Sequence record: OM319461.1
DNA: 64,000 bases
Direction: 5' to 3' (one strand)
Position 1 is the stretch's first letter. The number at the start of each line of letters is the position of its first letter. A program made the position numbers and the translations under genes. The notes below the pieces were generated by a model. It was not told where the DNA came from. It did no database searches and saw only the letters and a list, made by a program, of their open reading frames with translations. This document shows, one piece after another, positions 3,113 to 35,668 of this stretch.

Positions 3113-3157
3113 ANNATGTTCCTNNTGTGGTTTNAATACANNGTNGTTATATAGAGA

Positions 3158-3544
3158 TCACTTTGCGTTCATTGCATCNGCGATCNGNNTNAANANCTGG
3201 AANNCCNNNNNCATNANTNNCATNGGTGGGTAAAANCCNTAGCCATCNTCNNCNGGGAAGAAGTNNGTNTGNCNGTATTCNCCNACAGTNAANTTNCCNN
3301 NGNAGATCNCTTCNACTTCTGTTTGAGNNTGNANCATACGNGCATTCTGATCTNNNGTCATTNNTTTNGCTTCNNCATCNNANGGNGANGANTCAAANCN
3401 CAATNNNGNNAAGTNGAANNNNCCANNNTCNACNTNCGNGAAGTCGAACCANATNTCATGGTTGTGNTCATAAAATGTGAANGACGTGTGTTTCTTNGGN
3501 TCNAGTNTTTCTTTGTTNNNGAANNTNANTTCTGANCGNAGCAT
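3158..3544 (-). CDS. Hypothetical protein (128 aa, N-rich)
   Basis: Open frame, follows a terminator-like hairpin near 3575-3597; many ambiguous bases. Confidence 0.5.
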   Translation of the reverse strand: MXXSEXXFXNKEXXXXKKHTXFTFYXHNHXXWFDFXXXXXXXFXXXXLXFXXXXXDXEXKXMXXDQNXRMXXXQTEXEXIXXXXXTXXEYXXXXFFXXXDGXXFYPXMXXMXXXFQXXXXIXDAMNAK

Positions 3545-3603
3545 GNGNNATTNCTCNANTAAAAAATAAGNTAAGNGANGAGGGGTTTTACCCCCTCCTC
3601 NTT

Positions 3604-3795
3604 TTAGATTACCATNACTTCACTTGCNATGAAGTTGGCGATTGTTTGNACAGTNGGACTAGGTAAGTCAGCGATGTGNCGAATAGTACCAGGNTTNANN
3701 GTATCNTGGATACCGTANTGTGGCGCTAGTGTTTCGAANCCATCAGCTGTNGCATTATCNAGGATAAGCTCACCAGTCATCATGTCGCCNTCNAA
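3604..3795 (-). CDS. Non-virion RNAP beta' N-terminal subunit, exon 2 (phiKZ gp56.1-like)
   Basis: Begins TTN GAN GGC GAC ATG (F-D-G-D-M) immediately after a G at 3796, completing the NAD|FDGD active-site motif. Confidence 0.85.
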   Translation of the reverse strand, partial: XXGDMMTGELIXDNXTADXFETLAPXYGIXDXXXPGTIXHIADLPSXTXQTIANFXASEXMVI

Positions 3796-5128: not shown

Positions 5129-6463
5129 GTCTGCNTTTGGNCCNTTAATGGATATGACAGAGATCTTTATATCGTCTCGTGACAAACCAACGATGCGGAA
5201 ACGCTGAGTCGATAGACGGTCCAATGANGGATAACGNGTCAGTGTGGTGATAANACCACGACCTTTTCTTACCGAGCGAGTTGTCAATGTACAGCCGATC
5301 TCTGCTTCAATAGGTGAAACTTCATTCGGCTTGAGTGGAGGAGTCTCATCAATGAGATCTTCCAGGATGCGCCATAGTAGTGGATCACGATCCTTGGCAT
5401 GTTCATTGACATACGACATTGCTCTGGAAAGTGAGAAACCATGCTGTCTAACAAGTCGTCGTACTACGACGTGCTGGAGACAAGACAACATTTGGTTATA
5501 TGGCACAATCAACGTATCGTACTCATGTGGCTCATGGCGAGAAGTAATGATACCACGGTACGAGAAGTTTAGACGGTTACCATAAAGTACACGACGCAAC
5601 CAGCCAGGCTTACCAGACAGAACATTAGTTACTACATTCTGATAGTATTCACCTAGGTTAACCATCACTGACGTAAAGCGTGCTTCTAGTCGAGTAATGT
5701 CACGTTCTTCTTTAATCCCTGCTGCTGTGAAAGCTGCTTCTACCGCAGAGTCAATTGTCTGGTCGTAATACGTACCGACAGAAGTCTCTTCGATAATCAT
5801 TGCTACTTTACTTGGCAATGGGATTACACGTGTAAAGATTGCGTTGCGATACTTTTGAACGAACAATTGAAGTTCTAAGCGACGCTGAACATTGGTAATG
5901 TTCTTCAGTATGATCTTATCCAAGATAACATCAAAGTTTTCAATCACACTACGCAAGCCACGACGAATTCCTAGGTTATGGAAACCTTCGATAATACGAG
6001 TTGTCTTACAGTTAGCACGGTTAGAGGAAACTTCTGGCGTTACCTTGTTTGGGTTACACATCCACTCGAGGCCACTGAACTTACGATGCGTTAGTGGCTT
6101 ACTTAACATTACCCATGCAAGGGGCATGAAAAGAAATTCGATTTCATGTGGGGCTGCAATCCAAAGATCGGACTGGATAGCGCGTAAGTTTGGGGAAGCG
6201 ACGACTTGTCCACAAACATCACATTGAATACCTACTTGGTGTGCTTTATTGTATTTACCACACAAACAACGAGGACGGTTTTCCAAGACGTCTGTTGTAG
6301 AACATGTGGTTACAGTCAAGCTCTCCAGGAAGCGTTCATCATCTTTCGTATCTACCGACAGTTCATTTACAATGATAGGCGGAGTCTTCAAAGCATTGAA
6401 TTGCTCTTCGAAGTTTACCGGTCGGAATACAAGGCCCTTTTCTTTCAGTGTTGGTTTTGTCAT
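5129..6463 (-). CDS. Non-virion RNAP beta' N-terminal subunit, exon 1 (phiKZ gp55-like)
   Basis: Zn finger RCLCGKY...CDVCG; WLRRVLYGNRLNFSYRGII resembles RpoC [20 protein letters not shown]; ends P-x-A-D; lies directly downstream of chimallin. Confidence 0.9.
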
Positions 6464-6555: not shown

Positions 6556-8493
6556 CTAGATGTAGATGTGACCAGGGATGTGGTTACCGAATTGGCTACC
6601 TGCTGCACCAACGTTTGCACGGAACACATTGTTAACTACGTTACCGTCAATTGCTTGACCGTAAACGAAGCCGCTTGCTAGCTGGCTGATGATTTGAGTA
6701 TCAACTAGACCACGTGGGTTCATGTTGATGCCCGCAACAGACATAGCAGCTGCCATGCGTGGACCTAGCTCAGGGTTGAAGAATACACGGATGTATAGAG
6801 TATCGAAGTTACCTTCAGCCGATGGCTCAAGAGCAACGATATCTTTACGACGACCGTCTAGACGTTCTAGACCTTGAGCACCGTCAGTTGCACCAGGGAT
6901 GAATGATTCAGAGAATGCATTCACTGGAGAATCGATTGATGCTGCTTGCTCTTTAGCTGCTGCTACTGCAAATAGCGTATCGATGTGACGGATGTCAGAT
7001 GGAGAACCATCAGGTAGGTTGTATTCACCACCGTGAACGATAACTGTGTTAGCTTGGACAACTTCTTTGTCTTTAGCTTGAGCCCACTGTTTAGAGAACT
7101 CACCGCCAGTCATTGCGTCGAACAGGTTGATCAATGCATCGTTAGCGCCAGATACACGTTTAGCCGCAGCTAGGAATAGCTGTTGAGTCCAAGATTCAGC
7201 AGTACCGATACCGATGTCCATTGCTAGTGTCATTGAGTTATGCACGAAGTATGCGTCACAGAATGCACGGAATGTAACAGAGTCAGTAGAAGAAGCTGCT
7301 TGAGTGTACTCAATCATTTTTGGCTTAGGAGTAAACTGAACACCAGCACCAGCGTATGGTTCGTATTGGTAACCTAGTACACCTAGATCACGAGAGATAG
7401 GACCACGCTTAGCAGGGTTAGCGAAGATTGATTCCCAGTTACGACCAGATGCCAACAGAGTTGTAGACATTAGACCGATTACTGGAGTTAGTGGGTTTTC
7501 GATAGTTACACGTGCACAAGACTCAGATGCATCAACACCTGTTAGTACTAGTAGCGCATGGTTTTCTGGACGAGCGCCATTGTGCATCATACCTGGTTGC
7601 ATTTGTGGCATGATGCCAGGAGTACGGATAGTATCGAACTTAACTGCTGTACGAGAAAGTAGAGCAGACATACCGTCGTCATGTGGGTCGAAGCTGTTGT
7701 TCTTACGCTCTGAAGCGCGAACTGTGATAACTGCGTCACATGCTGTTGCACGGCCATTGCTCATTACAACGTTTTGACCAGGCAGGATTTCTGTGTCAAC
7801 GTCAACTTGAACTTCTTGGCTCTTGAACAGAGACACGTCAACCAAGTTAGCAGGGTTTGCTTTAGACTTGATTGCGTTTGCTGCTAGGTTGTAGATGCGC
7901 TCAACGTTACCTTCTTCAAGGATTGGTTGGTTCTTACCTACAGCGTAGAAGTGTACAGGCACAACTGCTTCACCAGCTACTTGGAATTTCTCTGCTAGGA
8001 AAGCACGTACTTTACCGATGTAGCGTTCGTTCCAGCATTTAGATACTGGGAAGTCGATTGTGATTTTCTTACCGCCGCCTGCGAAGTTTTTGTTAACTAG
8101 CTCTTCGTGTTGACGCATTGGAGCGTAAAGAAGTGCTTCAGGTAGAAGTGCGTAGAAGAAAACACGAGACTGAACTTTCTTAGCGTATACCATGATAGGT
8201 AGAGCTAGATCAGCTGGCTTAGCGTGGAAGAACTTAACTGCGTCTGCGCTACCGTCGCCTTTTTGGATTTCTTCAGTCGCTTCTACGAACTTAGCGAATG
8301 TACCTTCACCTAGAGAAGATACTTGAGTGTGACCGAATGCTGCAAGCATAGACTTGAAGCCGCCAGTTTGTTGTGCAGTTTGTTGTGGTTGAGCTGCTGC
8401 TGGAGCTGCTTGAGTTTGCACTTGTGGCTGAGCTACTTCTACTTGAGTTTCAGCTGATTTGTTTTGTTGTGCGTTTGGTGCTACGAATGTCAT
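6556..8493 (-). CDS. chmA: Chimallin (phage nucleus shell protein)
   Basis: 645 aa with a disordered Q/A-rich N-terminus; diagnostic synteny (DNA pol - opposite-strand core gene - ChmA - nvRNAP beta'). Call rests on size and synteny, not on alignment. Confidence 0.8.
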   Translation of the reverse strand: MTFVAPNAQQNKSAETQVEVAQPQVQTQAAPAAAQPQQTAQQTGGFKSMLAAFGHTQVSSLGEGTFAKFVEATEEIQKGDGSADAVKFFHAKPADLALPIMVYAKKVQSRVFFYALLPEALLYAPMRQHEELVNKNFAGGGKKITIDFPVSKCWNERYIGKVRAFLAEKFQVAGEAVVPVHFYAVGKNQPILEEGNVERIYNLAANAIKSKANPANLVDVSLFKSQEVQVDVDTEILPGQNVVMSNGRATACDAVITVRASERKNNSFDPHDDGMSALLSRTAVKFDTIRTPGIMPQMQPGMMHNGARPENHALLVLTGVDASESCARVTIENPLTPVIGLMSTTLLASGRNWESIFANPAKRGPISRDLGVLGYQYEPYAGAGVQFTPKPKMIEYTQAASSTDSVTFRAFCDAYFVHNSMTLAMDIGIGTAESWTQQLFLAAAKRVSGANDALINLFDAMTGGEFSKQWAQAKDKEVVQANTVIVHGGEYNLPDGSPSDIRHIDTLFAVAAAKEQAASIDSPVNAFSESFIPGATDGAQGLERLDGRRKDIVALEPSAEGNFDTLYIRVFFNPELGPRMAAAMSVAGINMNPRGLVDTQIISQLASGFVYGQAIDGNVVNNVFRANVGAAGSQFGNHIPGHIYI

Positions 8494-15122: not shown

Positions 15123-16085
15123 CTAGTTTTTCTTTTTCTTAGATGCTTTTGGGGCAGATGAAGTATTAAGGAAGCCTACGATCGTTTCCTCTGATACTAC
15201 ATGGATCCCACGAGCTTGTGCGTTTGCTAATGACTGGCGATCTACCGGAGTCAGAGTTTCTAGACGACTGGCTACAATCAAATCCGTTTGGGCGGACAGA
15301 TGCGAGGTCGGGTTTGCCCCAAGTCCACGTAAAACAGATTTCATACCAGAATGATCGAACTCGTGTTCGCCAATCAAGTTAAAGCCGATAACACACACTT
15401 CACGATCTTTAAGGATGCGGGACGATACTTGAACCGGACTTGTGATGTAGGTATCCAGGTCAACATCAGTACCAAGATGATGTGGGCGGATGTAAAGACC
15501 ATCTTCGTCCAACTTCATCATTTCCCATTCGATGATTCGGAAGTCGCCTTCGTTCTTACAAACAAGTCGTCCTTCTTCATTCTCATGAGTAGTCCATAGA
15601 TCAGTACAAGGACGTCCAGTAAAGCCATAGACTTCATCGTAGATCTCGAGCGTGAGTTCACGGAAGAACAATTTGTATTTTACAATATGTTCACGCAGGC
15701 GGATTTTGTTCGCTTTGAGATTGTCCTGATGCTGTTGGTTCATCTCGCTTACTGTGATGCCAGATGGAGCATAGTACTCTTTAAACCATTCGTCACGGGT
15801 GATCTCAACGATTGCATCCAAAGCAGAATCCAGGAGATCTTCTGCCTTCAGTGTACTACACAGACCAGGGATACCAGCATTGAGTGCATTAACGAACGCA
15901 TCTTCATATGTGGTACGAACATAATCATAAATAAAGCGCACGTCCCAGTGGATGTTTTGAGCATCGGTGTACTCAGTAGGGACATGAGGGATTTTACCTA
16001 ATAGCTCAACGGCCTTAGCTCGCCAATCAATTGTTATTTCTTTGAATTGATCAACATGGTTGGTCGGTTTCTTTTGGTTAGTCAT
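15123..16085 (-). CDS. Protein with C-terminal BRCT domain
   Basis: C-terminal VCVIGF...LRGLGA...TDLIVA...AQARGIHVVSEE matches the BRCT pattern of NAD-dependent ligases; N-terminal 230 aa unassigned. Confidence 0.7.
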   Translation of the reverse strand: MTNQKKPTNHVDQFKEITIDWRAKAVELLGKIPHVPTEYTDAQNIHWDVRFIYDYVRTTYEDAFVNALNAGIPGLCSTLKAEDLLDSALDAIVEITRDEWFKEYYAPSGITVSEMNQQHQDNLKANKIRLREHIVKYKLFFRELTLEIYDEVYGFTGRPCTDLWTTHENEEGRLVCKNEGDFRIIEWEMMKLDEDGLYIRPHHLGTDVDLDTYITSPVQVSSRILKDREVCVIGFNLIGEHEFDHSGMKSVLRGLGANPTSHLSAQTDLIVASRLETLTPVDRQSLANAQARGIHVVSEETIVGFLNTSSAPKASKKKKN

Positions 16086-17792: not shown

Positions 17793-18074
17793 TTAGAGAC
17801 TGCAAGCTTTATCTCGGCATACACGCTTGATGTCATCGTCACTGATGCCTGGAACCAACTTATTACCCAGCCCATTGGATCGTCTTACTTGTGCGATCTG
17901 TTGAATCTTCTTCTCTGCTGCATCGGGTTGCCATTTATGGGTGGCCAATGAATGGAGTTTACCCAGCGTTGAAGTTTTCTCAGATTCACACTCTCGTAAA
18001 ACTGACTTTCTTTCCATAGAAATTATGAGCCAGCTAAAGCCGATTAAAGCTGCGAATAGTATCGGTGTACCCAT
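17793..18074 (-). CDS. Membrane-anchored hypothetical protein
   Basis: N-terminal hydrophobic helix ILFAALIGFSWLIIS; GAGGTAGG RBS. Confidence 0.7.
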   Translation of the reverse strand: MGTPILFAALIGFSWLIISMERKSVLRECESEKTSTLGKLHSLATHKWQPDAAEKKIQQIAQVRRSNGLGNKLVPGISDDDIKRVCRDKACSL

Positions 18075-18164
18075 ACTTCGCCTACCTCTTATTAACTAAT
18101 ACGATTGAAGGAGTAACTTTAATTAACTAAAATTATACCCATAGGATTCGCTGTCATGAATGAA

Positions 18165-18285
18165 AAGAAAAAAAAAATAAACTATAACCTCCCACCCCGA
18201 AGGGCAGGAGGAATAGCAAGAGAGAACCTGAATGAATCCAGGTGTCCAATCCCGACCAAAGAATTGGATGCGTCACTTAACCATA
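18165..18285 (-). ncRNA. Candidate small RNA, array unit 5 (about 120 nt)
   Basis: ACCTAATCTTATG at 18294-18282; two hairpins (TCCAAT/ATTGGA, CCTG/CAGG); C/U-rich linker; terminator 18211-18188 plus long U-run. Confidence 0.6.
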
Positions 18286-18302
18286 AGATTAGGTGACCGA
18301 AT

Positions 18303-18595
18303 AAAAAATAAGATAAGGGGGTAGGGGCAACACCCCTACCACCATCGATGTTTAGGGACCAACTCATCCCGAGTCAATCCGTAACGATACAAACGTTATG
18401 AAATTTAAAAAAGCAGTAACTATTAAGCATTGTGCTTGTGGACCCTAAGGAAAGTCCGAAGGTAGGACAACACGAGAATGTCATCACAACTCACTTAACC
18501 CATGGTAACAGGACATGACCATTTAGAAGTAAGTCAGCTTTATTGAGGTTAATCATTAAAAGCTTAAGTTCAACAACAAAGGTTTCTTTGCTATA
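18303..18595 (-). ncRNA. Candidate small RNA, array unit 4 (about 290 nt, may be two RNAs)
   Basis: TAATCATATAG at 18601-18591; terminator GGTAGGGG/CCCCTACC 18340-18320 plus U-run; no ORF. Confidence 0.5.
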
Positions 18596-18613
18596 TGATT
18601 ACACTAGGCGGTT

Positions 18614-18785
18614 AAAAAGAAATTCACCCTCCCACCAAAGGCAGGAGGGTAGCTCTAGGAATCATTATGTCTAATATCAGAAAGCCACCACCACGATCAG
18701 AGGAGTGAACAGTTTTCCAAACGATGACGTGCCTAACCAATTAGGCAAGCAGAAAAAGCAGAAAGAGATCAACACTTTTACTATA
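18614..18785 (-). ncRNA. Candidate small RNA, array unit 3 (about 170 nt)
   Basis: ACCTAATAGTATA at 18794-18782; GCCTAA/TTAGGC hairpin; CACTCCTCT; terminator 18650-18626 plus U-run. Confidence 0.6.
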
Positions 18786-18804
18786 CTATTAGGTAGAAAC
18801 AAAC

Positions 18805-19117
18805 AAAAAGAATAATTAGCTTCCCCGCCATAGGCAGGGAGGCTTCACACTCTTAACGGTTTCGTTGCAGATCATAAGGTAAACTGCAATGGGTCAATCT
18901 CATGCAGATGACTTTAGAAGGCAGCCTCCCAACCATAGGAAAGGAGGCATCACAACTAAAACAATCTAAATTGGAGGCTTCACTCAAACAATTACCAAAC
19001 AGGTAAGAAATTAGAGAGACTATCATGCGACAAAGGTACAGGATACCAATGAACAATGAAAATGACTTAAGGAGATTCATCAACACTTAGGAGAGTAATT
19101 AATGTACTGAAGTCATA
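18805..19117 (-). ncRNA. Candidate small RNA, array unit 2 (about 310 nt)
   Basis: ACCCAATAGTATG at 19126-19114; multiple CTCC motifs; three GTGA(A/T)GCCTCC repeats; terminator 18843-18819 plus U-run. Confidence 0.6.
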
Positions 19118-19149
19118 CTATTGGGTGTGGTTGTTTTTTTTTAACGACA

Positions 19150-19270
19150 AAAGAAAAATACCTACCCCCTCCCGTTTGGGAGAGGGATGGTAGTTCAGAG
19201 GAGATAGACAACACAGAGACTACTCGCCAGTCTACTGCATTCACGCCGTCGTCATAACATGATTGTCTAC
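19150..19270 (-). ncRNA. Candidate small RNA, array unit 1 (about 120 nt)
   Basis: ACCCAATTGTGTAG variant at 19280-19267; closing stem TAGACAA/TTGTCTA; TCTCCTCT; terminator 19193-19161 plus U-run. Confidence 0.5.
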
Positions 19271-19379
19271 ACAATTGGGTATAATCCTTTTGAACTTTCT
19301 TCAGGTCTTATGGGGACAGGCTTCAGCACCATCTGATCAAAAATAACCAGTTGATTAAATTATTTGACACGAGCTTATT

Positions 19380-20600
19380 ATATCTTTTACTTATATCTTT
19401 AGATATAATTAGGAAAAAGATATTAATAACAGATTAAAAGAATATAAAGAGAGGTCCATTTACTTTATCTAAAGATAAAGATAAATATAATAACGCGCGA
19501 GAGCGCGTGGTTATTTTTCTCATAAAAATGATTTTTGAAGATTTCTCCCGTGAGGGAGGAATCATGATTATTTATATCTTTCGTAGATTCTAAGGATTCT
19601 AGGGATTGAATCATTTTGAACATCTCATGGGTATTATGTAGTAGAATCTCGTGATGTGTAACTTCATCTTAGTAAAACTAGATACAATATCATAATCTAA
19701 CTTAACTAACATGAATTTATAACATATCATAATTTTATTGCACTATGTGGTAAGGTTATTCTTATTCTACGACACAATATATTAAGATCTTTTGAATTTT
19801 ACTATGAGCCTTTAAATCTTAACAAAGTTTCTATTTTGTTTGCTTCTCTTAAAGGACTTAGTTAAAACTTGTGTGAGTTAATTCAATCATTAACTCCTTA
19901 GAGCTCCTGTATGGTTCTCTAAGACAATTATCCATTTCTATCTGATGCATCAATCAGATACAATAAGTTAAACTTCCTCATGGGTTATGTGGAAGCTAGT
20001 CGAACTTATATAGCTAAGTGATAACTTTCACAGAAGTTATCGGTATCAGATAAACTCATCTGATCCAGAACAACTCAATACTACCGAATTAACATTAAAA
20101 AATTCCCCAGTATCCAGAGTTATCCACATCGATGTATCCACCTCTCCCCTTAACGGGGGAGGGAGTGGGTATATCTCCGTCTACGAGCAAATAGCATATC
20201 CCTATACACGAAAATCACCAGATTTCACATAGAGACAAAAATAATAATATCTCCAGCTCTTTCGAGCCAGATGAAAAAAAAAATCGAAAATTTTTATATT
20301 AGCTTGTGGTTGTTGCTTATATCTTCTTCCCTATGCTTCTCTATCGATGATAGTCTAATGACATAGCTAGCTACTAGTTCTCATCTATCTTACATCTAGA
20401 TGAATCCTATCTATCTCTGTCTAGTCTTTCTATCTCTATCTCCCTATTATCTCTTTCTAAGATATACGCAAAAAACCCCCTCCCAGACGGTTCCCCCTTT
20501 CGAAAACTAAATCATTAGATTTAACTGTTTTTTATGATTTATAATTGAGAGAAAGAAAAAAAAAGAATAAGTACAGGAGAGAGGATAACCCCCTCTCCAT
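19380..20600. other. AT-rich ORF-free region, candidate replication origin
   Basis: No ORF of 60 aa or more; many TATCT/AGATA repeats, palindromes (19489-19515, 20140-20170), homopolymer tracts, one perfect TTATCCACA. Confidence 0.45.
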
Positions 20601-20604
20601 AGTC

Positions 20605-20955
20605 TTACAAGGCCAGATGTATAGATTCCTCAGGTAGATCATCGAATAGCTTACGATAACCTCGATTCAGATACCATCTACGAAAGTATCGATTCTCATC
20701 TAGGTTACGTGCAGCAGCTAACGAGTAGACAAACATCGTCCAGTCAGATAGCTTACCCTGTTTAGCATAGTCGATTAGCATCTCTGAGTCGACAAGCTCA
20801 CGATGGAACTCGGTAAACTCAGCCAGTAGCTTACTGTCGTAAGTATCGATACCTTTGTCATATGCAGTCCATCCGAAGATGATTGCTATTAGGCTACCCA
20901 ATACTGTTAGATCTAGATTGGTTAAAACATGTAGAGGATCAAAGAACATCTCCAT
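20605..20955 (-). CDS. Membrane-anchored hypothetical protein
   Basis: Hydrophobic LTVLGSLIAIIFGWTAY; GGAG RBS. Confidence 0.7.
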   Translation of the reverse strand: MEMFFDPLHVLTNLDLTVLGSLIAIIFGWTAYDKGIDTYDSKLLAEFTEFHRELVDSEMLIDYAKQGKLSDWTMFVYSLAAARNLDENRYFRRWYLNRGYRKLFDDLPEESIHLAL

Positions 20956-21289
20956 TGTCTACTCCTGGTACGTTAGTTAGTTTGTTGAATTCACGTGAGA
21001 AGATCCGTACGGCTATCTGAGGGGATTTCATCTCACGAGGTATGAGGTTGTCAGGGTACTGATCTAAAAACTGCTTATGGAGCTTTAGAGCGCATTCTCG
21101 ACCATGTGAATAAGCATCGTTACGATGACTAGCGTCAGCTAGATCACGAATAAGATCTACGAACTCGTGATTCCATCGAAGGATAAGACGACGCTGTCTC
21201 TCAGTCAAGAAGCGAACATAAATAAGGTCACCGAAGATACCGGTGAACATAAGAACTAAGATTGCGATGTCGAACATGTTAAACTCCAA
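20939..21289 (-). CDS. Membrane-anchored hypothetical protein (paralogue of 21279..21584)
   Basis: N-terminal TM helix; motif LHKQFLDQYPDN. Confidence 0.7.
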   Translation of the reverse strand: MEFNMFDIAILVLMFTGIFGDLIYVRFLTERQRRLILRWNHEFVDLIRDLADASHRNDAYSHGRECALKLHKQFLDQYPDNLIPREMKSPQIAVRIFSREFNKLTNVPGVDNGDVL

Positions 21290-21584
21290 AGTAATGTTCT
21301 TGACGTTTGTCTATAAACTTGCTGAAGCTGAAGTTACGTACAAACGGGTTATTAGGATACTGATTGAGGAACGAAAGATGAATTGTCCTAGCAGCCTCTG
21401 CTGCGGCTTTTGGGTCATCTGTCTTGATGGCGTACTCGCGATAAGCCTGACTCATGCGTTGGACCATGTAGACACTTTCACCATTGCATGAATCAGATTG
21501 TACTTGTGGCCAGATCTTTATTCCGCACCAAACAGCAAGAATGATGAGGGTCCCTATTGCGGTGGTAGCAAGAATAACTTCCAT
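21279..21584 (-). CDS. Membrane-anchored hypothetical protein (paralogue of 20939..21289)
   Basis: N-terminal TM helix; motif IHLSFLNQYPNN. Confidence 0.7.
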   Translation of the reverse strand: MEVILATTAIGTLIILAVWCGIKIWPQVQSDSCNGESVYMVQRMSQAYREYAIKTDDPKAAAEAARTIHLSFLNQYPNNPFVRNFSFSKFIDKRQEHYFGV

Positions 21585-21719
21585 CAGTTCTTCTCCACGG
21601 TTTTGGCATTATGGTCAACTACCCAGCATGAGGCACAAGAGCCACACGTGAAGATTTCCTTGTCTCCCGCATCCATCGAGTCCGTTAACTTGGCTGTGCA
21701 GTTAGGACACTTGTTCCTT

Positions 21720-22346
21720 TTAATCAGCTGATAAGCAGCTTGCATCATTTGTACTATAGACATGGTGTTTCTCCCAGTGGTATTTTAGTGGAAAGGCATC
21801 GTCCGACAGAGGGATAGAAACCACGATTAGGTTTTCCTCTACTGGCACAGATGCCGAATAACGGTTTGTTGGATTACCATCGCCTTCTTCGGCAATGGCT
21901 TTGGTATAGTTGTGCAGTAGACATGATACGGCATCGGTATCAATATCTTGTTCCATTGCCTCTGTGATCTCTTTGTCGAGCACAGCAAAGTAACGACATT
22001 GGATCTCTGGGATGTCAAGTGCATCCATCACATCAAATGAGCCTTCCTGGTTTAACCGTAGACGACTCATGTTAGAGCAATTGGTTTTTACTAGCTTAGC
22101 GCTGTAATAACGATACCCAGTCCAGCGAAGAAAATCTTCCTCTTCGTTTTCCGGACGACCGGTCACAAGATATTTCACTAGTGGACCGATATGGTGGACG
22201 ACGAGATAAAGCGGAGTATCCGACTTACGACGCGCGAGTAATTGGAGTAGAAACGAAACAGCCTCTTCCTCATGGTAGAAAGTAGCTTCTAGGTTTGTAT
22301 TGAAGTGTAGGCCAGTAGGCATTGTTTTGAATGTAATGTCTTCCAT
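21720..22346 (-). CDS. Hypothetical protein (208 aa)
   Basis: AAGGA RBS; first gene after the early motif at 22388. Confidence 0.7.
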   Translation of the reverse strand: MEDITFKTMPTGLHFNTNLEATFYHEEEAVSFLLQLLARRKSDTPLYLVVHHIGPLVKYLVTGRPENEEEDFLRWTGYRYYSAKLVKTNCSNMSRLRLNQEGSFDVMDALDIPEIQCRYFAVLDKEITEAMEQDIDTDAVSCLLHNYTKAIAEEGDGNPTNRYSASVPVEENLIVVSIPLSDDAFPLKYHWEKHHVYSTNDASCLSAD

Positions 22347-22387
22347 TGGTTTATTCCTTTTTGGTTTTAATGCATCAATCTACATTG

Positions 22388-22397
22388 GTAATATAGA
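22388..22397 (-). promoter_or_regulatory. Early promoter motif TCTATATTAC
   Basis: Exact repeat of the motif upstream of a minus-strand operon. Confidence 0.7.
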
Positions 22398-22438
22398 GCT
22401 GATCCTCCAATGAAAAAAAAAACAACCATACCTAATAG

Positions 22439-22691
22439 TATGCACAACTCTGCCTGAACGATTACGTTTCGTGTGGAACTCCAAATGAAAGTGTGCATTG
22501 AATGTGAGTCATAGAGCTACACCGTAGGACTATGCATGCCGAGCTGCTTAATCGAATCACATCGACCCTGGGACTTTACCCCAGTAAGTTGACGTGTGTA
22601 GGTTTTGACCTCGCTCGTTGAATTGCCCGAGAGGGCAGGTAGGTACGGACGGCCCTTGTGGGTCGTCCGTGCTCTATACCTCTATTTTTTA
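22439..22691 (+). ncRNA. Structured RNA upstream of TROVE gene (Y RNA or leader candidate, about 250 nt)
   Basis: Starts at the TATG of ACCTAATAGTATG; stems ATGCACA/TGTGCAT, CACATCGAC/GTTGACGTGTG, GAGA-tetraloop hairpin 22623-22637; strong terminal hairpin 22642-22673 plus U-run. Confidence 0.65.
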
Positions 22692-22704
22692 TTGAGGACT
22701 TGTT

Positions 22705-24255
22705 ATGAACAAAAATAAAATCACCCAGACTCTTTTCGAAAGCGAAGTAGAATTAAGTACTTTGCTGGATTCCCTTAAGGAACGCAATGTGATCAGTCTC
22801 GAGACTACACTTAAGCGCATTCTATTGACGGGCACGAATGGTCATGTGGCATCTATCGATTGTGGCGATCAAGTTTATTCCGACGTAGCCTTCAATGGTT
22901 ATGAAGAACAGATCAAGCAACGTGGTAGAGAGATCACTAGTTTTGTTACATCCCAATCATATCCTTTTACAAAAGAAACAAAAGCAAATCGATTATTCGT
23001 CTTGGCAAAAATCGCCGGTAACACAGACGACTTCGAAGCGAGTAGTTATGCATTGAATACAGCAGTTGATCTCTGTATGGATGCTGAAGACATACTTCGC
23101 TTTGCATGTTTCATTTCATACTATCGTGGCTTTGGCCGCATGGTTAAGAAAGTACTTAGCCGTTGGTACCTTGAACGAGATCCTCGTGACTTGTTGTGTG
23201 AGGTATTGGCATGTAAGAAGGTAACGGTACAGTTCGATGAAAAACCGATATCATTTAGCCACCGTAATCTTGTACGTCGTTTGTTTCTGCGTGGCAGTGA
23301 TGACTTACAAGACGCATGTCTGCGAATTATCAAAGGATACCGTGGAGACGCCTCAGAGATCCCTCAGCGCTTCTTGACCCTACAAGAGGTGTTAGGCCTT
23401 AACTTATGTACTAAAGGCTCTGTGGAGACCGCTGCGAAGATCATAGAAGGATTACCTTTTGATCATACCGTATATCCGAAGAAGTTCTTGTACTACACGG
23501 AAATAATGAGTGCTTTGTTTTATGGCAAGCATGTCACTCCTGAGAAGTTCCTTGACTTCGTGAAGATTGATCCGACATTCGAATTCTTAGATGACCGATT
23601 GGCAGATCGCTTTATTCATATTGTCGGCGGATGGCTTCGTGACCAACGCATCACTCCAGTAGATCTTTTAATCTATCGTGAGCTACTCGATGCTGATCGT
23701 TTCAAAGAGACACGTAGACTATTGCTTCGTCGCTATGAAGAAGTCGAGTATCCAGAACGTGGTGTGGAAAACAATGTAGTATTCCTTTACCTCAACTGGG
23801 ATCAGATCAACCGAGAAGTTGTTGCTAATGCACTTGATCGTGCCAAGTCACTTCGCTGTATGTTGGTCATCGTTGGTGAGGGTACATTTGTATTGGATCC
23901 TAAGGACGTAACCCTGGATGCATTATGTAAGCACCTGTCAGTTGTTGAAAAGGATCATGTCATAATGCCTTCTATGTCGTTTATTCAGATTCTGATGACA
24001 CAGCCGGTTGCCTATGACAACGTAGTTATCTATGAGCATCGTCCTGTAGTTAAGTCAGACCATTATCGTAAAGGCTTCCTAGACGCCCTGGATACGTATT
24101 TGACTGGTCGTAACCCATTGACCAAGATAATCCACCAAACGGCCGTAGAGGACGCTACAGTGATTCTGGATGAACCACGACATGCTGGTCTACTCACAGT
24201 AAAAGGACTAGGTACACTACAAACTAAGATTGTAGATATCTTCCTTGGAAAATAA
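22705..24255 (+). CDS. Divergent Ro60/Rsr-like TROVE-domain protein
   Basis: RGFGRMVKKVLSRWYLERDPRDLL...FSHRNLVRR resembles the TROVE GxGR...WY...SHRDLLRL signature; alpha/beta C-terminal domain in the vWA position but lacks DxSxS. Confidence 0.7.
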   Translation: MNKNKITQTLFESEVELSTLLDSLKERNVISLETTLKRILLTGTNGHVASIDCGDQVYSDVAFNGYEEQIKQRGREITSFVTSQSYPFTKETKANRLFVLAKIAGNTDDFEASSYALNTAVDLCMDAEDILRFACFISYYRGFGRMVKKVLSRWYLERDPRDLLCEVLACKKVTVQFDEKPISFSHRNLVRRLFLRGSDDLQDACLRIIKGYRGDASEIPQRFLTLQEVLGLNLCTKGSVETAAKIIEGLPFDHTVYPKKFLYYTEIMSALFYGKHVTPEKFLDFVKIDPTFEFLDDRLADRFIHIVGGWLRDQRITPVDLLIYRELLDADRFKETRRLLLRRYEEVEYPERGVENNVVFLYLNWDQINREVVANALDRAKSLRCMLVIVGEGTFVLDPKDVTLDALCKHLSVVEKDHVIMPSMSFIQILMTQPVAYDNVVIYEHRPVVKSDHYRKGFLDALDTYLTGRNPLTKIIHQTAVEDATVILDEPRHAGLLTVKGLGTLQTKIVDIFLGK

Positions 24256-24264
24256 ACCAAATAG

Positions 24265-24368
24265 TATGGCTTTTTAAAAAGCTTCGGGACAGAGTAAGTG
24301 AGGGCTTACTGGTTCTTCTATTTGGTTAAGATACTATTTCTTCCCGCCCTTCGGGGTGGGTATTTTTT
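24265..24368 (+). ncRNA. Candidate small RNA downstream of TROVE gene (about 100 nt)
   Basis: ACCAAATAGTATG at 24256-24268; hairpins GCTTTT/AAAAGC and AGTAAG/CTTACT; UUCG terminator 24343-24360 plus U-run. Confidence 0.5.
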
Positions 24369-24431
24369 TTTTCGCCAAACAAAAAAAAAGAATAAAAGAT
24401 AAGCCTACTCCCCGAAGGGAGTAGGGCTTTA

Positions 24432-25466
24432 TTAGAACTCGATCTCGTCGAAGTTGATGTCGTTTTGTAACGGTGTTTGTTGCTGCGGCGCTTCTTGATG
24501 TTGAGGCTGTTGCTGCTGCGGTGCAGAATTGAACTCATCAGTTTGCTGCTGTGGCTGTTGCGCTGGAGCTTGGCTTTGACCTGAGTTTACAGATGGAATA
24601 GCCGCTGGCGGAACATAAGCAATACTTTCACGAATAGAGAATGGACCAGCTGAGATAACTGCGCCACGGAAACCATCGCGTGATTGCTCATTGATTTCTT
24701 TCATTACTTGGAATTCTTTCGGTGCTAGACAGCGCTTCATGAATTCAGGTAAGTTGTCGTACTCGGCAACCATGTTAACTTCATTGTTCTTGACTTTAAC
24801 TTTGCCTTTCTTAACAAGACCGTATTGACGACCATCTAGATCCATACCAAAGTCATGCGAGTACGTACGGAAACCGTAGTCTACAAAATCATCTGGTAGA
24901 GCAGAGTATGCCATAAACATTAGGAAGTCAATGCTTACTTTTGACAAGCGGTTAGCAGGACCATCAGGAACTAGCTCGGCCATGAACTTGTTAGCTGGTT
25001 TTACTTCCATGCCGTTGTAGGCATTAAGAATACGGCGGTGTTTGTCGATCACGTAACGTGTGTAACAAGGAATGTGACGGAAGTCTGTCTCTTCGCTGTT
25101 ATGGATCCACATGATAGGTGAACTGTACTTAGCGTGATAGAAGTTACTTTCGTAGTTCGTATCAAACTTTTCTAGACGTGGGAATTCCGGATGAGTGTGG
25201 TGAATACCAAACTGCATTGTGTTGTACATTGCTGCTACTGGAATCGGTAGAGGTGTACGACTTGGATCGCCATCTAGAACAATCGTTTCTTTAGAAACTT
25301 CAGTACCGCGTGTACCGTAGTCACGTAGAGCTGCTTTGTTTTCGTGTTTGCATGCTGCTTCGATAAGAGGGTGAAGTTCATGCTCGCGTGCTAGTTGAGG
25401 ACGAGGTTTAGGTTGAAAGCCACCACCACCGCCTCCGCGGCGACCGCCACGATATCCATAGGACAT
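24432..25466 (-). CDS. Putative nucleic-acid-binding protein with RGG N-terminus and SSB-like acidic tail
   Basis: MSYGYRGGRRGGGGGG start, P/Q-rich linker, ends NDINFDEIEF; own terminator 24404-24425. Confidence 0.6.
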   Translation of the reverse strand: MSYGYRGGRRGGGGGGFQPKPRPQLAREHELHPLIEAACKHENKAALRDYGTRGTEVSKETIVLDGDPSRTPLPIPVAAMYNTMQFGIHHTHPEFPRLEKFDTNYESNFYHAKYSSPIMWIHNSEETDFRHIPCYTRYVIDKHRRILNAYNGMEVKPANKFMAELVPDGPANRLSKVSIDFLMFMAYSALPDDFVDYGFRTYSHDFGMDLDGRQYGLVKKGKVKVKNNEVNMVAEYDNLPEFMKRCLAPKEFQVMKEINEQSRDGFRGAVISAGPFSIRESIAYVPPAAIPSVNSGQSQAPAQQPQQQTDEFNSAPQQQQPQHQEAPQQQTPLQNDINFDEIEF

Positions 25467-26723: not shown

Positions 26724-27938
26724 ATGGCTTATTCTTCCATTCGTGCAGTGTTCGATGATTTCAGTAACCTGACCGTAGATAAAAACTTTATCCAAAAACT
26801 TACGTTTTATGTTTACGGATTCATCAACAAAAACGAAACCCATACTGCTCACTTTGGTAGTAACCTGGTGGGTGTTCGTCCTGTCCGTTATGTAGATGCC
26901 GATGCGATTCGCTGGCTAGAAGACATACTGGGCATTGACGAGAAACGTGACTGTCAGCAGGCATTGTTCACTGTAGATCACGTAGAAAAGAATCACCGCG
27001 TTCGCAGTGACATCGTCAACCTGTCTTTCATCTATATAATGCATCGTATCGCAACTTCTAAGTTAGATCAAAAGACAAAAGATGAAGCGCTAATACTTAC
27101 GATCATCATGAATCTGTCAAAGCACATGTGTTCACTTCTATCGCATCGTTTTAAATTCCCAAGTGATGAAATCATCGCACAACAACTATATGAATCGCTC
27201 GATAACAAATCGCATCTAAAGCGCTACGGTAGTTGGTTTAACATGATGCGTAATACGGCCCTGGAAATGCTGGAGCCTAAGGGTATTCATACTGCACGCA
27301 AAACATGGCAGACGATGGCCCGCGACAAAGATGTGCTCTACATGTGTGGGGATATACAGGACCGCCTGGCCGGTCAGATTAACCTATTGACAGAGAAATA
27401 CCATGAAATCAAGAATAACTCAGATCGCCTTACCCTTAATTCTCCAATCAACAGTATTGAAGGTGAAGCAGTTCTCGCTGAATTCATTTCAAAGGAACGG
27501 CATCTTGTTAAAGACATGCTCGAAATTGCCAAAGATCCCCGTGACTTTATTCGCGATGAATTAGTCGACGCAACATTAGAGATCATCTCGACAGCAGAAG
27601 AAACGCATTTCCGTAAAACCCTAAACTACCTAGCGGATAATATTTCGGCAGTGCCTGCTTATCAGGAAACAGTCTCTAAGCTAGTTGTCTTTATTCTTAC
27701 CGAAGCACGCCAAGGTCGCATCAATCTAAACCAAGCATCAGAAATCATTGGTCGCTTGCGTTCTACGATGCGCTCGTCTCGTGTCAAGAAGAAAGATGCA
27801 CTGGAGCTCAAAGAGATCTTCCGTACTTTGGTAGAGGATGCGATTCCTACTGCCCGTGACCCAATCAAGGTCGCTACTCAGATTGCCGTGATGATTTATA
27901 TTGCATTGCGCATGCTGACAATCAATCGTTACCGATAA
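26724..27938 (+). CDS. Virion structural protein (phiKZ gp32-like)
   Basis: 404 aa, HFGSNLVGV motif, convergent with the terminase. Confidence 0.55.
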   Translation: MAYSSIRAVFDDFSNLTVDKNFIQKLTFYVYGFINKNETHTAHFGSNLVGVRPVRYVDADAIRWLEDILGIDEKRDCQQALFTVDHVEKNHRVRSDIVNLSFIYIMHRIATSKLDQKTKDEALILTIIMNLSKHMCSLLSHRFKFPSDEIIAQQLYESLDNKSHLKRYGSWFNMMRNTALEMLEPKGIHTARKTWQTMARDKDVLYMCGDIQDRLAGQINLLTEKYHEIKNNSDRLTLNSPINSIEGEAVLAEFISKERHLVKDMLEIAKDPRDFIRDELVDATLEIISTAEETHFRKTLNYLADNISAVPAYQETVSKLVVFILTEARQGRINLNQASEIIGRLRSTMRSSRVKKKDALELKEIFRTLVEDAIPTARDPIKVATQIAVMIYIALRMLTINRYR

Positions 27939-35450: not shown

Positions 35451-35668
35451 TTTTGTTCTCCTGGGTTAAAATCAAAATAAGCTTATTTGTTTAGGATGTT
35501 TTTTGTAACCTAGATCAATCCAATTGTATAGGTCTTGTCCCCGTTTCAGCTTAGGCTTAGGAGACAGGGACATCCTATTCGATTCGTCCTAAGCGTTTCG
35601 AATCTGCTGAGAAGCAGAGGTTTAAATTTAAACGAAATACCTCAAATAGAATTCTAGAGGAAACAATA

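What the first reader, a model, noticed from the sequence alone, without database searches (positions are those of the whole stretch)
18165..19280. Tandem array of about five autonomous small-RNA genes with anti-Shine-Dalgarno motifs
Seen: 1.1 kb without credible ORFs is tiled on the minus strand by repeated [promoter motif - 120 to 310 nt - GC hairpin + U-run] units. Each promoter-like motif (ACCCAATTGTGTAG 19280, ACCCAATAGTATG 19126, ACCTAATAGTATA 18794, TAATCATATAG 18601, ACCTAATCTTATG 18294) sits at a unit start; the last four lie within about 10-35 nt of the preceding U-run. The same motif precedes the sheath operon and the TROVE-linked RNAs. The RNA bodies have internal hairpins, C/U-rich linkers with CUCC/CUCCU (UCUCCUCU, CUCUCCU, AUCUCCU, CACUCCUCU) and shared short boxes (AAGUGUUGAU in units 2 and 3; GGUUAAGUGA in units 4 and 5). 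Inference: a phage-encoded battery of late trans-acting sRNAs that occlude ribosome-binding sites of host or phage mRNAs, or bait an RNA-binding protein. I know of no described equivalent in nucleus-forming phages.
Basis: partly seen in the sequence, partly recalled or inferred. Interest (0 to 1): 0.88.

Follow-up and report, generated by a model that had tools for sequence, protein, structure and literature searches.

The report
Conserved small-RNA gene array, jumbo phage
A nucleus-forming Vibrio jumbo phage carries five back-to-back short genes, each with its own phage promoter and terminator, that encode no protein. The same kind of array (3-7 units) sits at the same genome position in five related phage lineages, so these are very probably real small regulatory RNAs whose function is still untested.

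Summary
Window 18165-19280 (minus strand; Vibrio phage C-ZP2022, a chimallivirus) is tiled by five units of promoter motif, then a 103-301 nt body, then a GC hairpin with a U-run. A sixth copy of the promoter drives the next protein gene.

The promoter motif (AATnnTRTR, often ACCYAATnnTATG) ends in the TATG element of phiKZ late promoters. It also precedes the chimallin, DNA polymerase, sheath and Ro60-like genes.

The same promoter/terminator alternation (3-7 units) occupies the syntenic gap in pir03, sm033 and three metagenomic contigs.

- No unit has a conserved ORF or one preceded by a Shine-Dalgarno sequence.
- Unit 1 is orthologous in all lineages. It has a covarying 7-bp stem, an invariant GACGACG loop, an exposed UCUCCU and a terminator.
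- The last unit keeps an exposed UUCUCUYUU.
- CUCCU is about 4.7-fold enriched in the unit bodies.

The CCUCC/GGAGG hairpins are this phage's ordinary terminators. The two "shared boxes" are at chance level. Ribosome-binding-site occlusion is only an inference, and my target predictions are weak.

Verdict: a real, conserved, clade-specific battery of sRNA genes, a new variant of phage-encoded sRNAs, with an unproven mechanism.

The parts
19267..19280 (-). Promoter motif of unit 1 (ACCCAATTGTGTAG). The inferred start site is about 19268.
   Evidence: conserved in pir03
19150..19268 (-). Unit 1 RNA (about 117 nt). Hairpin H1 at 19262-19240 has an invariant GACGACG loop. A second hairpin follows, then an exposed AUCUCCUCU (about 19205-19197), the terminator hairpin 19186-19165 and a U-run.
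   Evidence: Fold z = -3.3. Orthologues in six genomes; the H1 stem has 7 bp, 4 of them with compensatory changes. A covariance model of H1 hits once per genome, E 2e-7 to 4e-5, and these are the training sequences. CUCC unpaired with P = 0.91.
19114..19126 (-). Promoter motif of unit 2 (ACCCAATAGTATG).
18800..19114 (-). Unit 2 RNA (about 310 nt). Exposed CUCUCCU and AUCUCCU lie near the 5' end. An internal CCUCC/GGAGG hairpin at 18947-18925 has no U-run. The terminator hairpin is at about 18846-18817, with a U-run that starts 4 nt after the stem.
   Evidence: (z = -3.6). The 3' 170 nt are 95% identical to pir03.
18782..18794 (-). Promoter motif of unit 3 (ACCTAATAGTATA).
18612..18782 (-). Unit 3 RNA (about 170 nt), with CACUCCUCU at about 18708-18700 and the terminator at 18651-18625.
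   Evidence: (z = -2.5); 93% identical to pir03
18591..18601 (-). Promoter motif of unit 4 (TAATCATATAG). This is the weakest match; pir03 has TAATGATGTAG.
18300..18592 (-). Unit 4 RNA (about 290 nt). It has several hairpins and no CUCC motif. The terminator is at 18340-18320.
   Evidence: z = -3.5. Against pir03, the hairpin at RNA positions 109-126 has 5 changed pairs, all still paired, and the terminator stem has changed pairs that keep pairing, though its outermost predicted pairs break.
18282..18294 (-). Promoter motif of unit 5 (ACCTAATCTTATG).
18165..18282 (-). Unit 5 RNA (about 118 nt): two hairpins, an exposed GUUCUCUCUUG (18227-18217), the terminator 18211-18188 and a long U-run.
   Evidence: z = -3.7; 98% identical to pir03. 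The same layout and the UUCUCUYUU motif occur in the last units of sm033, L012 and L008.
18140..18148 (-). Sixth copy of the same promoter core (GAATCCTATG). It drives the 93-aa gene 18074-17793.
   Evidence: the equivalent is present in all relatives
19281..20604 (-). Adjoining AT-rich non-coding zone upstream of the array. It has no promoter of the array's type. It holds a conserved G-rich element (20497-20476), the conserved GGATAACTCTGGATACTGGGG (20125-20105) and TAGA/GATAG repeats. Whether it belongs to the array is unknown.

Best explanation
Shown or strongly supported (about 0.85). The region is a battery of five independent genes for structured, non-coding small RNAs (about 115-310 nt). 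Each has its own phage promoter of the TATG class (by analogy, the non-virion RNA polymerase of middle/late infection) and its own intrinsic terminator. The locus is conserved in a clade of nucleus-forming Vibrio phages. It evolves by gain, loss and divergence of units (3-7 per genome), while the first and last units are kept.

Inferred (about 0.4). The RNAs act in trans by base pairing. They use pyrimidine-rich segments held single-stranded just upstream of the terminator (UCUCCU in unit 1, UUCUCUYUU in the last unit, CUCCU in many others). These are complementary to the AGGAGA-type Shine-Dalgarno regions of this phage's mRNAs, and of host mRNAs too. Pairing would modulate translation initiation or mRNA stability late in infection. 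The invariant AAGACGACG loop of unit 1 would be a second contact, to an RNA or a protein.
For: Anatomy. Promoter motifs and terminators alternate perfectly.

Promoter class. The same motif precedes chimallin, DNA polymerase, the sheath gene and the Ro60-like gene. It ends in the TATG of phiKZ late promoters (PMC4666361). The early-type motif CTATATTACC is absent from the array.

Non-coding. No conserved ORFs and none preceded by an SD, against SDs at 37 of 56 real genes. No tRNA and no Rfam family.

Conservation. The same architecture fills the syntenic gap in pir03, sm033 and three Logan contigs whose Ro60-like protein is 38-41% identical.

Purifying selection. Units 5, 3 and the 3' part of unit 2 are 98%, 93% and 95% identical between C-ZP2022 and pir03. 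Third codon positions of neighbouring genes are 60-87% identical.

Structure.
- Fold z-scores run from -2.5 to -3.7.
- In H1 of unit 1, 4 of 7 pairs show double compensatory changes around an invariant loop.
- Against pir03, 22 changed pairs keep pairing and 21 break.
- Paired positions change 9.5% and unpaired positions 16.3%.

Mechanism.
- CTCCT is 15 against 3.2 expected in unit bodies, and GAGA is depleted.
- The CUCCU of unit 1 is conserved and unpaired in all lineages.
- Phage SDs are AGGAGA/GAGGA.
- CUAUCUCCUC of unit 1 in C-ZP2022 is complementary to GAGGAGAUAG. The core GGAGATAG lies in 5 of 287 translation-initiation regions, two RNAP subunit genes among them.
- The translation-initiation region of the 404-aa gene next to terminase ranks 1, 1, 1 and 3 among 23-27 local genes for the cognate unit-1 segment in four genomes.
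Against: There are no expression data for any of these phages. Start sites, ends and timing rest on analogy with phiKZ.

The pyrimidine-rich stretch next to a terminator and U-tail is also the classical Hfq-binding module. It need not be a seed.

Several units lack CUCC altogether: unit 4, unit 5, and units 4 and 7 of sm033.

Over all units the motif is not significantly more accessible than background (p = 0.08).

Target prediction is weak. Genome-wide in C-ZP2022 the 404-aa gene ranks only 14 of 265. Cognate seeds beat non-cognate seeds in only 2 of 4 genomes. After correction for multiple testing the sRNA/target co-variation is not significant. The host genome could not be searched.

RNAs made inside the phage nucleus would have to be exported to meet ribosomes.
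Confidence: 0.42

Rival explanations
1. The RNAs work by binding protein (as sponge, decoy or cofactor), not by pairing with mRNA. They would bind or titrate Hfq (terminator hairpin + U-tail + upstream U/C-rich stretch), the phage Ro60-like protein encoded 3.4 kb away, or another phage or host RNA-binding protein. The invariant AAGACGACG loop of unit 1 would be a protein recognition site.
For: An invariant 7-9 nt loop on a covarying stem is typical of a protein or RNA docking site. In L008, L011 and L012 the motif is present twice in unit 1.

Every unit ends in hairpin + U-run preceded by a pyrimidine-rich single strand, which is the Hfq-module layout.

The neighbouring 516-aa protein has a Ro60/Rsr fold by Foldseek: the top 10 hits are all Ro60/TROVE, E = 1e-10, though TM is only about 0.25. 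It is flanked by two further conserved sRNA-like units. All promoter-to-terminator non-coding units of the 288-kb genome except a 56-nt one at record 250151-250206 lie within 12 kb around it.
Against: No Y-RNA hallmark is present: 5' and 3' ends do not form the closing stem, and there is no Rfam Y_RNA/YrlA hit at E <= 1.

The two units that flank the Ro60-like gene are better candidates for its partners.

There are no GGA-loop repeats of the CsrB type.

Binding cannot be tested in silico.
Confidence: 0.3
2. The whole 2.5-kb non-coding zone (18075-20604) is a cis-acting DNA region, such as a replication origin or a packaging/regulatory region. The short strongly transcribed units would serve mainly to activate or prime it, as transcription does at T4, T7 and lambda origins, or to insulate it. 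The RNA products themselves would matter little.
For: The adjoining zone is AT-rich (33% GC at 19-20 kb). It holds TAGA/GATAG-type repeats, a conserved G-rich element and a conserved 21-mer that contains the window's only perfect DnaA box. The G-rich element and the repeats persist in a more distant relative that has only about one unit (L143).
Against: RNA-level covariation and invariant loops show selection on the transcripts. sm033 and L012 have full arrays but only a short upstream zone without the 21-mer. One DnaA box in 128 kb of sequence (both strands) is about what chance gives.
Confidence: 0.1
3. The units are evolutionary debris: promoter-terminator cassettes duplicated in tandem (decayed morons), transcribed or not, with no function of their own.
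For: The number of units varies from 3 to 7 and most bodies are not alignable between lineages. Terminator hairpins are homogenised within a genome. The 5' half of unit 4 and the middle of unit 2 evolve at about the neutral rate.
Against: The first and last units are retained over deep divergence with covarying stems and invariant motifs. Units 5, 3 and the 3' part of unit 2 are more conserved than synonymous sites. CUCCU is enriched and GAGA depleted.
Confidence: 0.08
4. The units are mRNAs for micro-proteins.
For: GenBank annotates tiny ORFs here: CZP2022_217 and _218, and 15 ORFs of 29-63 aa in pir03. Mechanical ORFs of up to 77 aa exist.
Against: No ORF is preceded by an SD. None is conserved between C-ZP2022 and pir03 (the 77-aa ORF breaks up), let alone in the other lineages. 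Indels are not in multiples of three. The annotated ORFs lie on inconsistent strands.
Confidence: 0.03

Closest known systems
sRNA candidates of the nucleus-forming phages phiKZ and 201phi2-1 (ONT-cappable-seq, Grad-seq; PMC10914365, PMC11512511)
   Same: Same virus family. Short (<250 nt) structured transcripts, delimited by a phage promoter and an intrinsic terminator, of unknown function. One of them is conserved across genera by position.
   Different: Most of those arise by premature termination in 5'UTRs; only 3 in 201phi2-1 are intergenic. They are scattered, not arrayed. At the syntenic position next to gp42, phiKZ has no array. Here 3-7 autonomous units lie head to tail. Unlike those candidates, none of these has transcriptomic support yet.
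Hfq-dependent trans-acting sRNAs of Gammaproteobacteria, including multi-copy families such as the Vibrio Qrr1-5 (from my own knowledge)
   Same: Size is about 100-300 nt. Each has its own promoter, 5' hairpins, a single-stranded U/C-rich stretch, and then a Rho-independent terminator with a U-tail. Several sRNAs are present per genome.
   Different: The Qrr genes are paralogues with a shared seed, dispersed in the genome and dependent on sigma-54. Here the bodies are mostly unrelated, sit in tandem, and use a phage RNA polymerase promoter. Hfq binding has not been tested.
C/U-rich anti-Shine-Dalgarno sRNAs such as S. aureus RNAIII and RsaE, and B. subtilis RoxS (from my own knowledge)
   Same: Exposed pyrimidine-rich motifs (UCCC/CUCC) complementary to SD sequences. 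The proposed mode of action is occlusion of the ribosome-binding site.
   Different: In those RNAs the motifs sit in hairpin loops and their targets have been validated. Here the motifs sit in linkers next to the terminator, and no target is validated.
Y RNAs bound by Ro60/Rsr (bacterial YrlA/YrlB next to rsr)
   Same: Small non-coding RNA genes clustered near a Ro60-like gene. The phage protein has a Ro60 fold.
   Different: The array RNAs lack the closing stem between the 5' and 3' ends, and no Rfam family matches. The two units directly flanking the Ro60-like gene are likelier Y-RNA analogues.

Membership tests
phiKZ-type late (nvRNAP) promoter | 5'-TATG-3' overlapping the start site, with +1 = G (PMC4666361) | tested here: inconclusive
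   Units 2 and 5 have TATG, units 3 and 4 have TATA(G), and unit 1 has TGTA(G). The motif is extended upstream (AAT-N2) in this clade, unlike phiKZ. Start sites have not been measured.
phiKZ-type late (nvRNAP) promoter | Found upstream of late or structural genes and distinct from the AT-rich early motif | tested here: met
   It precedes the sheath gene (35522-35530), and also the chimallin, DNA polymerase and Ro60-like genes. The early-type motif CTATATTACC occurs 4 times upstream of other operons and never in the array.
Intrinsic (Rho-independent) terminator | GC-rich hairpin followed directly by a U-run | tested here: met
   In unit 2 the U-run starts 4 nt after the stem, so it may be weaker. 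Stems covary between genomes.
Any curated RNA family (Rfam 15), including Y_RNA, tRNA, tmRNA, 6S and riboswitches | Covariance-model score at or above the gathering threshold | tested here: not met
   No hit in the whole window at the gathering threshold. In 17900-24600 the only hit at E <= 1 is a Leu_leader match at E = 0.23, outside the array. ARAGORN finds nothing.
Hfq-dependent sRNA | 3' module: hairpin, U-tail of at least about 6 U, and an upstream U-rich single strand | tested here: met
   Predicted structures of units 1 and 5 and their orthologues. This is a resemblance only.
Hfq-dependent sRNA | Binding to and dependence on Hfq; validated seed-target pairing | not testable with these tools
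   Needs co-IP or RIL-seq in infected cells.
Y RNA (Ro60 partner) | Stem formed by the 5' and 3' ends that carries the Ro-binding helix | tested here: not met
   In all units the 3' end is a local terminator hairpin. There is no Rfam hit.
Protein-coding micro-gene | A conserved ORF with a ribosome-binding site | tested here: not met
   against the control.

The most novel reading that the evidence does not exclude
A clade of nucleus-forming Vibrio jumbo phages maintains a fast-evolving, multi-gene sRNA locus. Its products, made by the phage's own RNA polymerase, carry exposed anti-Shine-Dalgarno segments matched to the phage's own extended ribosome-binding sites, for example GGAGAUAG at RNAP subunit genes. 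The phage would thereby reprogram translation of selected phage and/or host mRNAs late in infection. This would be the first dedicated riboregulator battery described in a chimallivirus.
Probability: 0.25. Interest if true: 0.8.

Novelty: new variant of a known kind. Interest (0 to 1): 0.62.

Why it matters
Phage-encoded regulatory RNAs are barely explored. In nucleus-forming phages only scattered candidates, mostly 5'UTR-derived, are known, and none has a function.

A conserved locus of 3-7 autonomous sRNA genes gives a defined target that can be deleted. It could show what non-coding RNAs do in a phage that separates transcription (inside the phage nucleus) from translation (in the cytoplasm): whether such RNAs are exported, whether they tune translation of phage RNAP or structural genes, and whether they engage Hfq or the phage's Ro60-like protein.

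The promoter and terminator consensus derived here also improves annotation. It removes about 17 spurious tiny ORFs in two GenBank records. It also gives compact phage-polymerase promoter/terminator parts.

Tried and rejected
1. Searches for more relatives.
- Single-protein and profile searches of IMG/VR with the Ro60-like and 93-aa proteins found nothing.
- The terminator pattern in IMG/VR gave three unrelated single terminators.
- The unit-1 pattern GTAAGACGACGAC-N15-45-TCTCCT gave 2 IMG/VR and 120 metagenome hits. None had a promoter plus terminator or a closing stem, so all are chance.
- The 93-aa protein has only the pir03 homologue.

2. All-against-all local alignment of units. The significant scores come from the terminator hairpins. 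Bodies are not alignable by sequence apart from the orthologous first, last and second units seen by eye.

3. MAFFT alignment of unit 1 misplaced sm033, and for H1 it put the gap outside the loop. I therefore used a manual structural alignment. The covariance model built from A5 only re-finds its own training sequences, and no copy turns up in L142 or L143.

4. The shared boxes GGUUAAGUGA and AAGUGUUGAU are at chance level.

5. Complement of the unit-1 loop (CGTCGTCTT). The apparent excess in the window most likely reflects GAC-GAC codon runs, which I did not check. It points to no convincing target.

6. I considered resemblance to CRISPR repeats, ToxI-type antitoxin repeats and pieces of 16S rRNA, by eye and from memory only. 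Matches were at most 6-8 nt, so I dropped them.

7. Calling the 320-aa neighbour PhuZ. It has no Pfam or PHROG hit. It sits at the gp43 position relative to phiKZ. A more distant relative has a weak Tubulin/TubZ hit at that position. I left this open.

8. Pfam and PDB sequence searches did not confirm 'TROVE'. Only the fold search did.
Full report
IDENTITY OF THE WINDOW. The window is 100% identical to Vibrio phage C-ZP2022 (OM319461.1, 287,943 bp; window position x = record position x + 186,000). It is 88% identical to Vibrio phage vB_pir03. It encodes a chimallin-type nuclear shell protein (6556-8493), pieces of multisubunit RNA polymerase, DNA polymerase, terminase and tail sheath.

THE OBSERVATION.

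- ACCYAATNNTRTR occurs 6 times in 64 kb against 0.25 expected (0 of 100 shuffles). Four are in the array, one lies 150 nt upstream of chimallin, and one lies 263 nt upstream of the Ro60-like ('TROVE') gene.
- The core AATNNTRTR has 27 hits. Seventeen of them are in the 14% of the window that is intergenic, oriented towards DNA polymerase, the operon starting at 16402, the gene at 26724, the sheath gene and others.
- Genome-wide there are 97 hits, 36 of them in the 9% of the genome that is intergenic.

Each unit ends in a strong GC hairpin plus a U-run. The scan of 16-22 kb found 21 terminator-like sites against 4.4+-2.2 in shuffles. Promoter and terminator alternate without exception. A sixth promoter (18148-18140) directly follows the unit-5 terminator and drives the 93-aa gene at 18074-17793.

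The non-coding zone is larger than reported (18075-20604). Its upstream 1.3 kb is AT-rich and has no promoter of this type.

WHICH PROMOTER CLASS.

The motif ends in TATG, TATA or TGTA. In phiKZ, late promoters recognised by the non-virion RNA polymerase are defined by 5'-TATG-3' with the G as +1 (PMC4666361, PMC7598289).

A different, AT-rich 10-mer, CTATATTACC, occurs four times exactly. All four are intergenic and upstream of minus-strand operons (16444, 22396, 26659, 63701). A one-mismatch copy lies upstream of chimallin. This fits the description of early vRNAP promoters in such phages (PMC7598289).

The array contains only the TATG class. 'Late' (or middle/late) is therefore a reasonable inference by analogy. 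It is not a measurement.

NOT PROTEIN-CODING. I listed every ORF of 12 codons or more in all 28 units of the six genomes.
- None is conserved.
- The 77-aa GTG ORF of unit 2 breaks up in pir03.
- Only two starts have a chance AGGA upstream. In contrast, 37 of 56 real genes have an SD, typically AGGAGA or GAGGA.
- Indels between C-ZP2022 and pir03 are not in threes.
- The tiny ORFs annotated in GenBank (two in C-ZP2022 and fifteen in pir03, on both strands) are inconsistent between the two records.
- There are no tRNA or tmRNA genes and no Rfam family, even at E <= 1.

COMPARATIVE EVIDENCE.

tblastn with flanking proteins found vB_VpaM_sm033. Its Ro60-like protein is 36% identical by tblastn (38% in the alignment), and its gp42-like protein is 63% identical. 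Protein searches found three further lineages in Logan assemblies: L008, L011 and L012, with Ro60-like proteins 38-41% identical.

All keep the gene order, and all have a gap without ORFs upstream of the 91-95-aa gene. In every gap the minus strand shows the same perfect alternation of AATnnTRTR motifs and hairpin/U-run terminators. There are 7 units in sm033, 3 in L008, 4 in L011 and 4 in L012, and the gene's own promoter follows each time.

A more distant relative (L143; its 404-aa protein is 57% identical) has only about one unit. BONAISHI, the Yong phages and phiKZ have none at this position, although the Yong phages use the same promoter motif. The array is therefore clade-specific.

ORTHOLOGOUS UNITS AND RNA STRUCTURE.

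Most bodies are not alignable between lineages; the local-alignment signal comes from the terminators. The first unit, however, is clearly orthologous in all six genomes. It consists of:
- a hairpin H1 with the invariant loop core GACGACG (AAGACGACG in four lineages);
- a variable middle part;
- a single-stranded YCUCCU;
- a terminator.

In a manual structural alignment, the 7-bp H1 stem is paired in 38 of 42 cells. Four pairs show double compensatory changes (UA/CG, CG/AU, AU/CG, AU/UA), including a U-A to C-G switch between the close pair C-ZP2022 and pir03. A covariance model of H1 finds one site per genome (E 2e-7 to 4e-5; these are its training sequences) and nothing else below E = 0.38.

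The last unit (C-ZP2022 unit 5, sm033 unit 7, L012 unit 4, L008 unit 3) keeps its size (101-133 nt) and its layout of two hairpins, a single-stranded (A/G)UUCUCUYUU and a terminator. The stems differ in sequence. Unit 2 of sm033 and unit 2 of L012 share their 5' end and the box GCACAAUAUAUUGGGAAAGCC.

All five C-ZP2022 units fold better than dinucleotide shuffles, z = -2.5 to -3.7. Part of this comes from the terminators.

Between C-ZP2022 and pir03:
- paired positions change less often than unpaired ones (9.5% against 16.3%);
- 22 changed pairs keep pairing, 4 of them through double changes, and 21 break, mostly among long-range predicted pairs;
- one unit-4 hairpin has five changed pairs, all still paired;
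- nucleotide identity is 98% for unit 5, 93% for unit 3 and 95% for the 3' part of unit 2, against 60-87% at third codon positions of neighbouring genes. The 5' half of unit 4 and the middle of unit 2 drift.

Taken together, I hold it as very likely (about 0.85) that these are genes for functional structured RNAs.

THE ANTI-SD CLAIM.

First, the CCUCC in the hairpin arms is generic. CCTCCTGCCTTCGGGCAGGAGG also forms the bidirectional terminator between convergent protein genes at 38683-38704. Other terminators of the window are of the same C/U-arm, GGGAG-arm type (27975, 30191, 61259). Terminator hairpins are homogenised within each genome and differ between genomes, which points to duplication or gene conversion.

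Second, the shared boxes are at chance level.

A real signal remains. In unit bodies without terminators (23 units, 2,820 nt), CTCC occurs 20 times against 8.1+-2.8 and CTCCT 15 times against 3.2+-1.7 (0 of 500 shuffles for each). GGAG is as expected, and GAGA is depleted (3 against 12.2). In unit 1 the motif is conserved in position and predicted unpaired, P = 0.86-0.91. Over all units, accessibility is not significantly above background (0.54 against 0.43, p = 0.08), and eight units have no CUCC at all.

The same layout (U/C-rich single strand, hairpin, U-tail) is the textbook Hfq-binding module. The motif could therefore serve protein binding and not pairing.

TARGET LEADS (WEAK).

I scored duplexes between the single-stranded segment of unit 1 and translation-initiation regions. 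The 404/405-aa gene next to terminase (window 26724-27938; PHROG 2921, function unknown) ranks first in L008, L011 and sm033, and third in C-ZP2022, among 23-27 local genes.
- It is not the strongest SD for a 16S tail (ranks 18, 14, 7, 8).
- Fully shuffled seeds put it first in only 1-12% of trials.
- The two bases after GGAGA co-vary with the sRNA: UA/UA, CA/UG, AG/UU.

However, genome-wide in C-ZP2022 this gene ranks 14 of 265. The best sites are initiation regions carrying GGAGATAG, which occurs in 5 of 287 regions, including those of an RNAP beta' gene and an RNAP beta gene. Cognate seeds win in only 2 of 4 genomes. After allowing for about 25 genes tested, the co-variation is not significant. 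The host genome could not be searched. I report this as a lead only.

CONTEXT.

A genome-wide scan of C-ZP2022 for promoter-to-terminator units outside ORFs finds only the following:
- the leader of the DNA polymerase gene (record 198177-198273);
- the array;
- one unit upstream and one unit downstream of the Ro60-like gene;
- one 56-nt unit at record 250151.

Apart from that last unit, this kind of RNA gene is confined to a 12-kb zone. The two units flanking the Ro60-like gene are conserved in all six genomes.

The Ro60-like protein has no Pfam or PDB sequence match. An AlphaFold model (pLDDT 72.6, pTM 0.49) has Ro60/Rsr/TROVE structures as its ten best Foldseek hits, E = 1e-10 to 1e-6. These include a Ro60 from a Thermus phage. 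The TM-scores are low (about 0.25), so only the fold assignment is supported, not the domain arrangement.

COMPARISON WITH WHAT IS KNOWN.

ONT-cappable-seq and Grad-seq have reported sRNA candidates in phiKZ (17, derived from 5'UTRs) and in 201phi2-1 (11, of which 3 are intergenic). One is conserved by position upstream of a tail gene. None has a function (PMC10914365, PMC11512511, PMC13282480). The paper describing pir03 mentions no promoters, terminators, non-coding or intergenic regions, or sRNAs.

A head-to-tail battery of autonomous sRNA genes, conserved in position and variable in copy number, is not described there. I classify it as a new variant of a known kind (phage-encoded sRNAs), not as categorically new.

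VERDICT. The sRNA-gene array is real with high probability. The mechanism (SD pairing against protein binding) is open, and I prefer pairing at about 0.4. Interest is 0.62.

Noticed in passing
window 22430-22700 (+) and 24260-24370 (+): The Ro60-like ('TROVE') gene 22705-24255 is flanked by two more promoter-to-terminator non-coding units. The upstream one is about 250 nt, with the boxes ATCGAGCTG and CCTCGCTCRTT and a GGACGGCC/GGTCGTCC terminator. The downstream one is about 95 nt; its promoter begins immediately after the stop codon, and it has a 5' hairpin and a GGUUAA box. Both are conserved in all six related genomes. They are plausible Y-RNA analogues, but Rfam does not recognise them.
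   Followed up: partly
window 22705-24255 (+): The protein annotated as 'TROVE' has no Pfam hit (E <= 0.01) and no PDB sequence hit. Its AlphaFold model, however, matches Ro60/Rsr structures as the top 10 Foldseek hits (E = 1e-10; TM only about 0.25).
   Followed up: yes
window 12281-12111 (-): The DNA polymerase gene has a leader made of a promoter (CCAATAGTATA, 12283-12273), a strong 17-bp terminator hairpin with a U-run (12211-12172), and then the ATG at 12111. This is the premature-termination type of 5'UTR sRNA or attenuator described for phiKZ.
   Followed up: no
window 16444-16435, 22396-22387, 26659-26650, 63701-63692 (all -); 8778-8769 (1 mismatch): An AT-rich 10-mer, CTATATTACC, recurs upstream of minus-strand operons and of chimallin. 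It is probably the early (virion RNAP) promoter of this phage. Chimallin and the operon starting at 16402 carry both promoter types.
   Followed up: partly
window 19281-20604: An AT-rich 1.3-kb non-coding zone lies upstream of the array. It has a conserved G-rich element GGGGGAACCGTCTGGGAGGGGG (20497-20476, also in sm033 and L008, and degenerate in L143). It has TAGA/GATAG repeats at about 20460-20370. It also has a conserved hairpin followed by GGATAACTCTGGATACTGGGG (20125-20105; also in pir03, L008 and L011), which contains the window's only perfect DnaA box (20120-20128). It could be an origin or a regulatory region, or could hold further RNAs with a different promoter.
   Followed up: partly
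window 38683-38704: CCTCCTGCCTTCGGGCAGGAGG, the hairpin typical of the array units (and identical to four sm033 unit terminators), also serves as a bidirectional terminator between the convergent genes 37754-38620 (+) and 38718-39833 (-).
   Followed up: yes
L008 6991-6801, L011 6967-6667, L003 6431-5543: Terminator hairpins are nearly identical within a genome and different between genomes: UCUCCGG-UGUAGG-CCGGAGA in L008 and L011, and CCUCCUGCC-UUCG-GGCAGGAGG in sm033. In unit 3 of L011 the loop is the reverse complement (CCUACA). This suggests cassette duplication, gene conversion or inversion.
   Followed up: no
window 18156-18296 (+), 19465-19614 (-); L002 6624-9081: GenBank annotates two tiny ORFs in this zone in C-ZP2022 and fifteen in pir03 (29-63 aa, on both strands). 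They are not conserved between the two records and are probably spurious.
   Followed up: partly
window about 2740-5260: Ambiguous bases (N) are scattered through this stretch of the deposited genome. They affect several ORF starts.
   Followed up: no
window 15123-16085 (-): This 320-aa protein has no Pfam or PHROG hit. BONAISHI annotates a 'tubulin-like protein' at this position, and a distant relative (L143) has a weak Tubulin/TubZ_C hit there. Relative to phiKZ, however, the position corresponds to gp43, not to PhuZ (gp39). It may be a very divergent PhuZ.
   Followed up: partly
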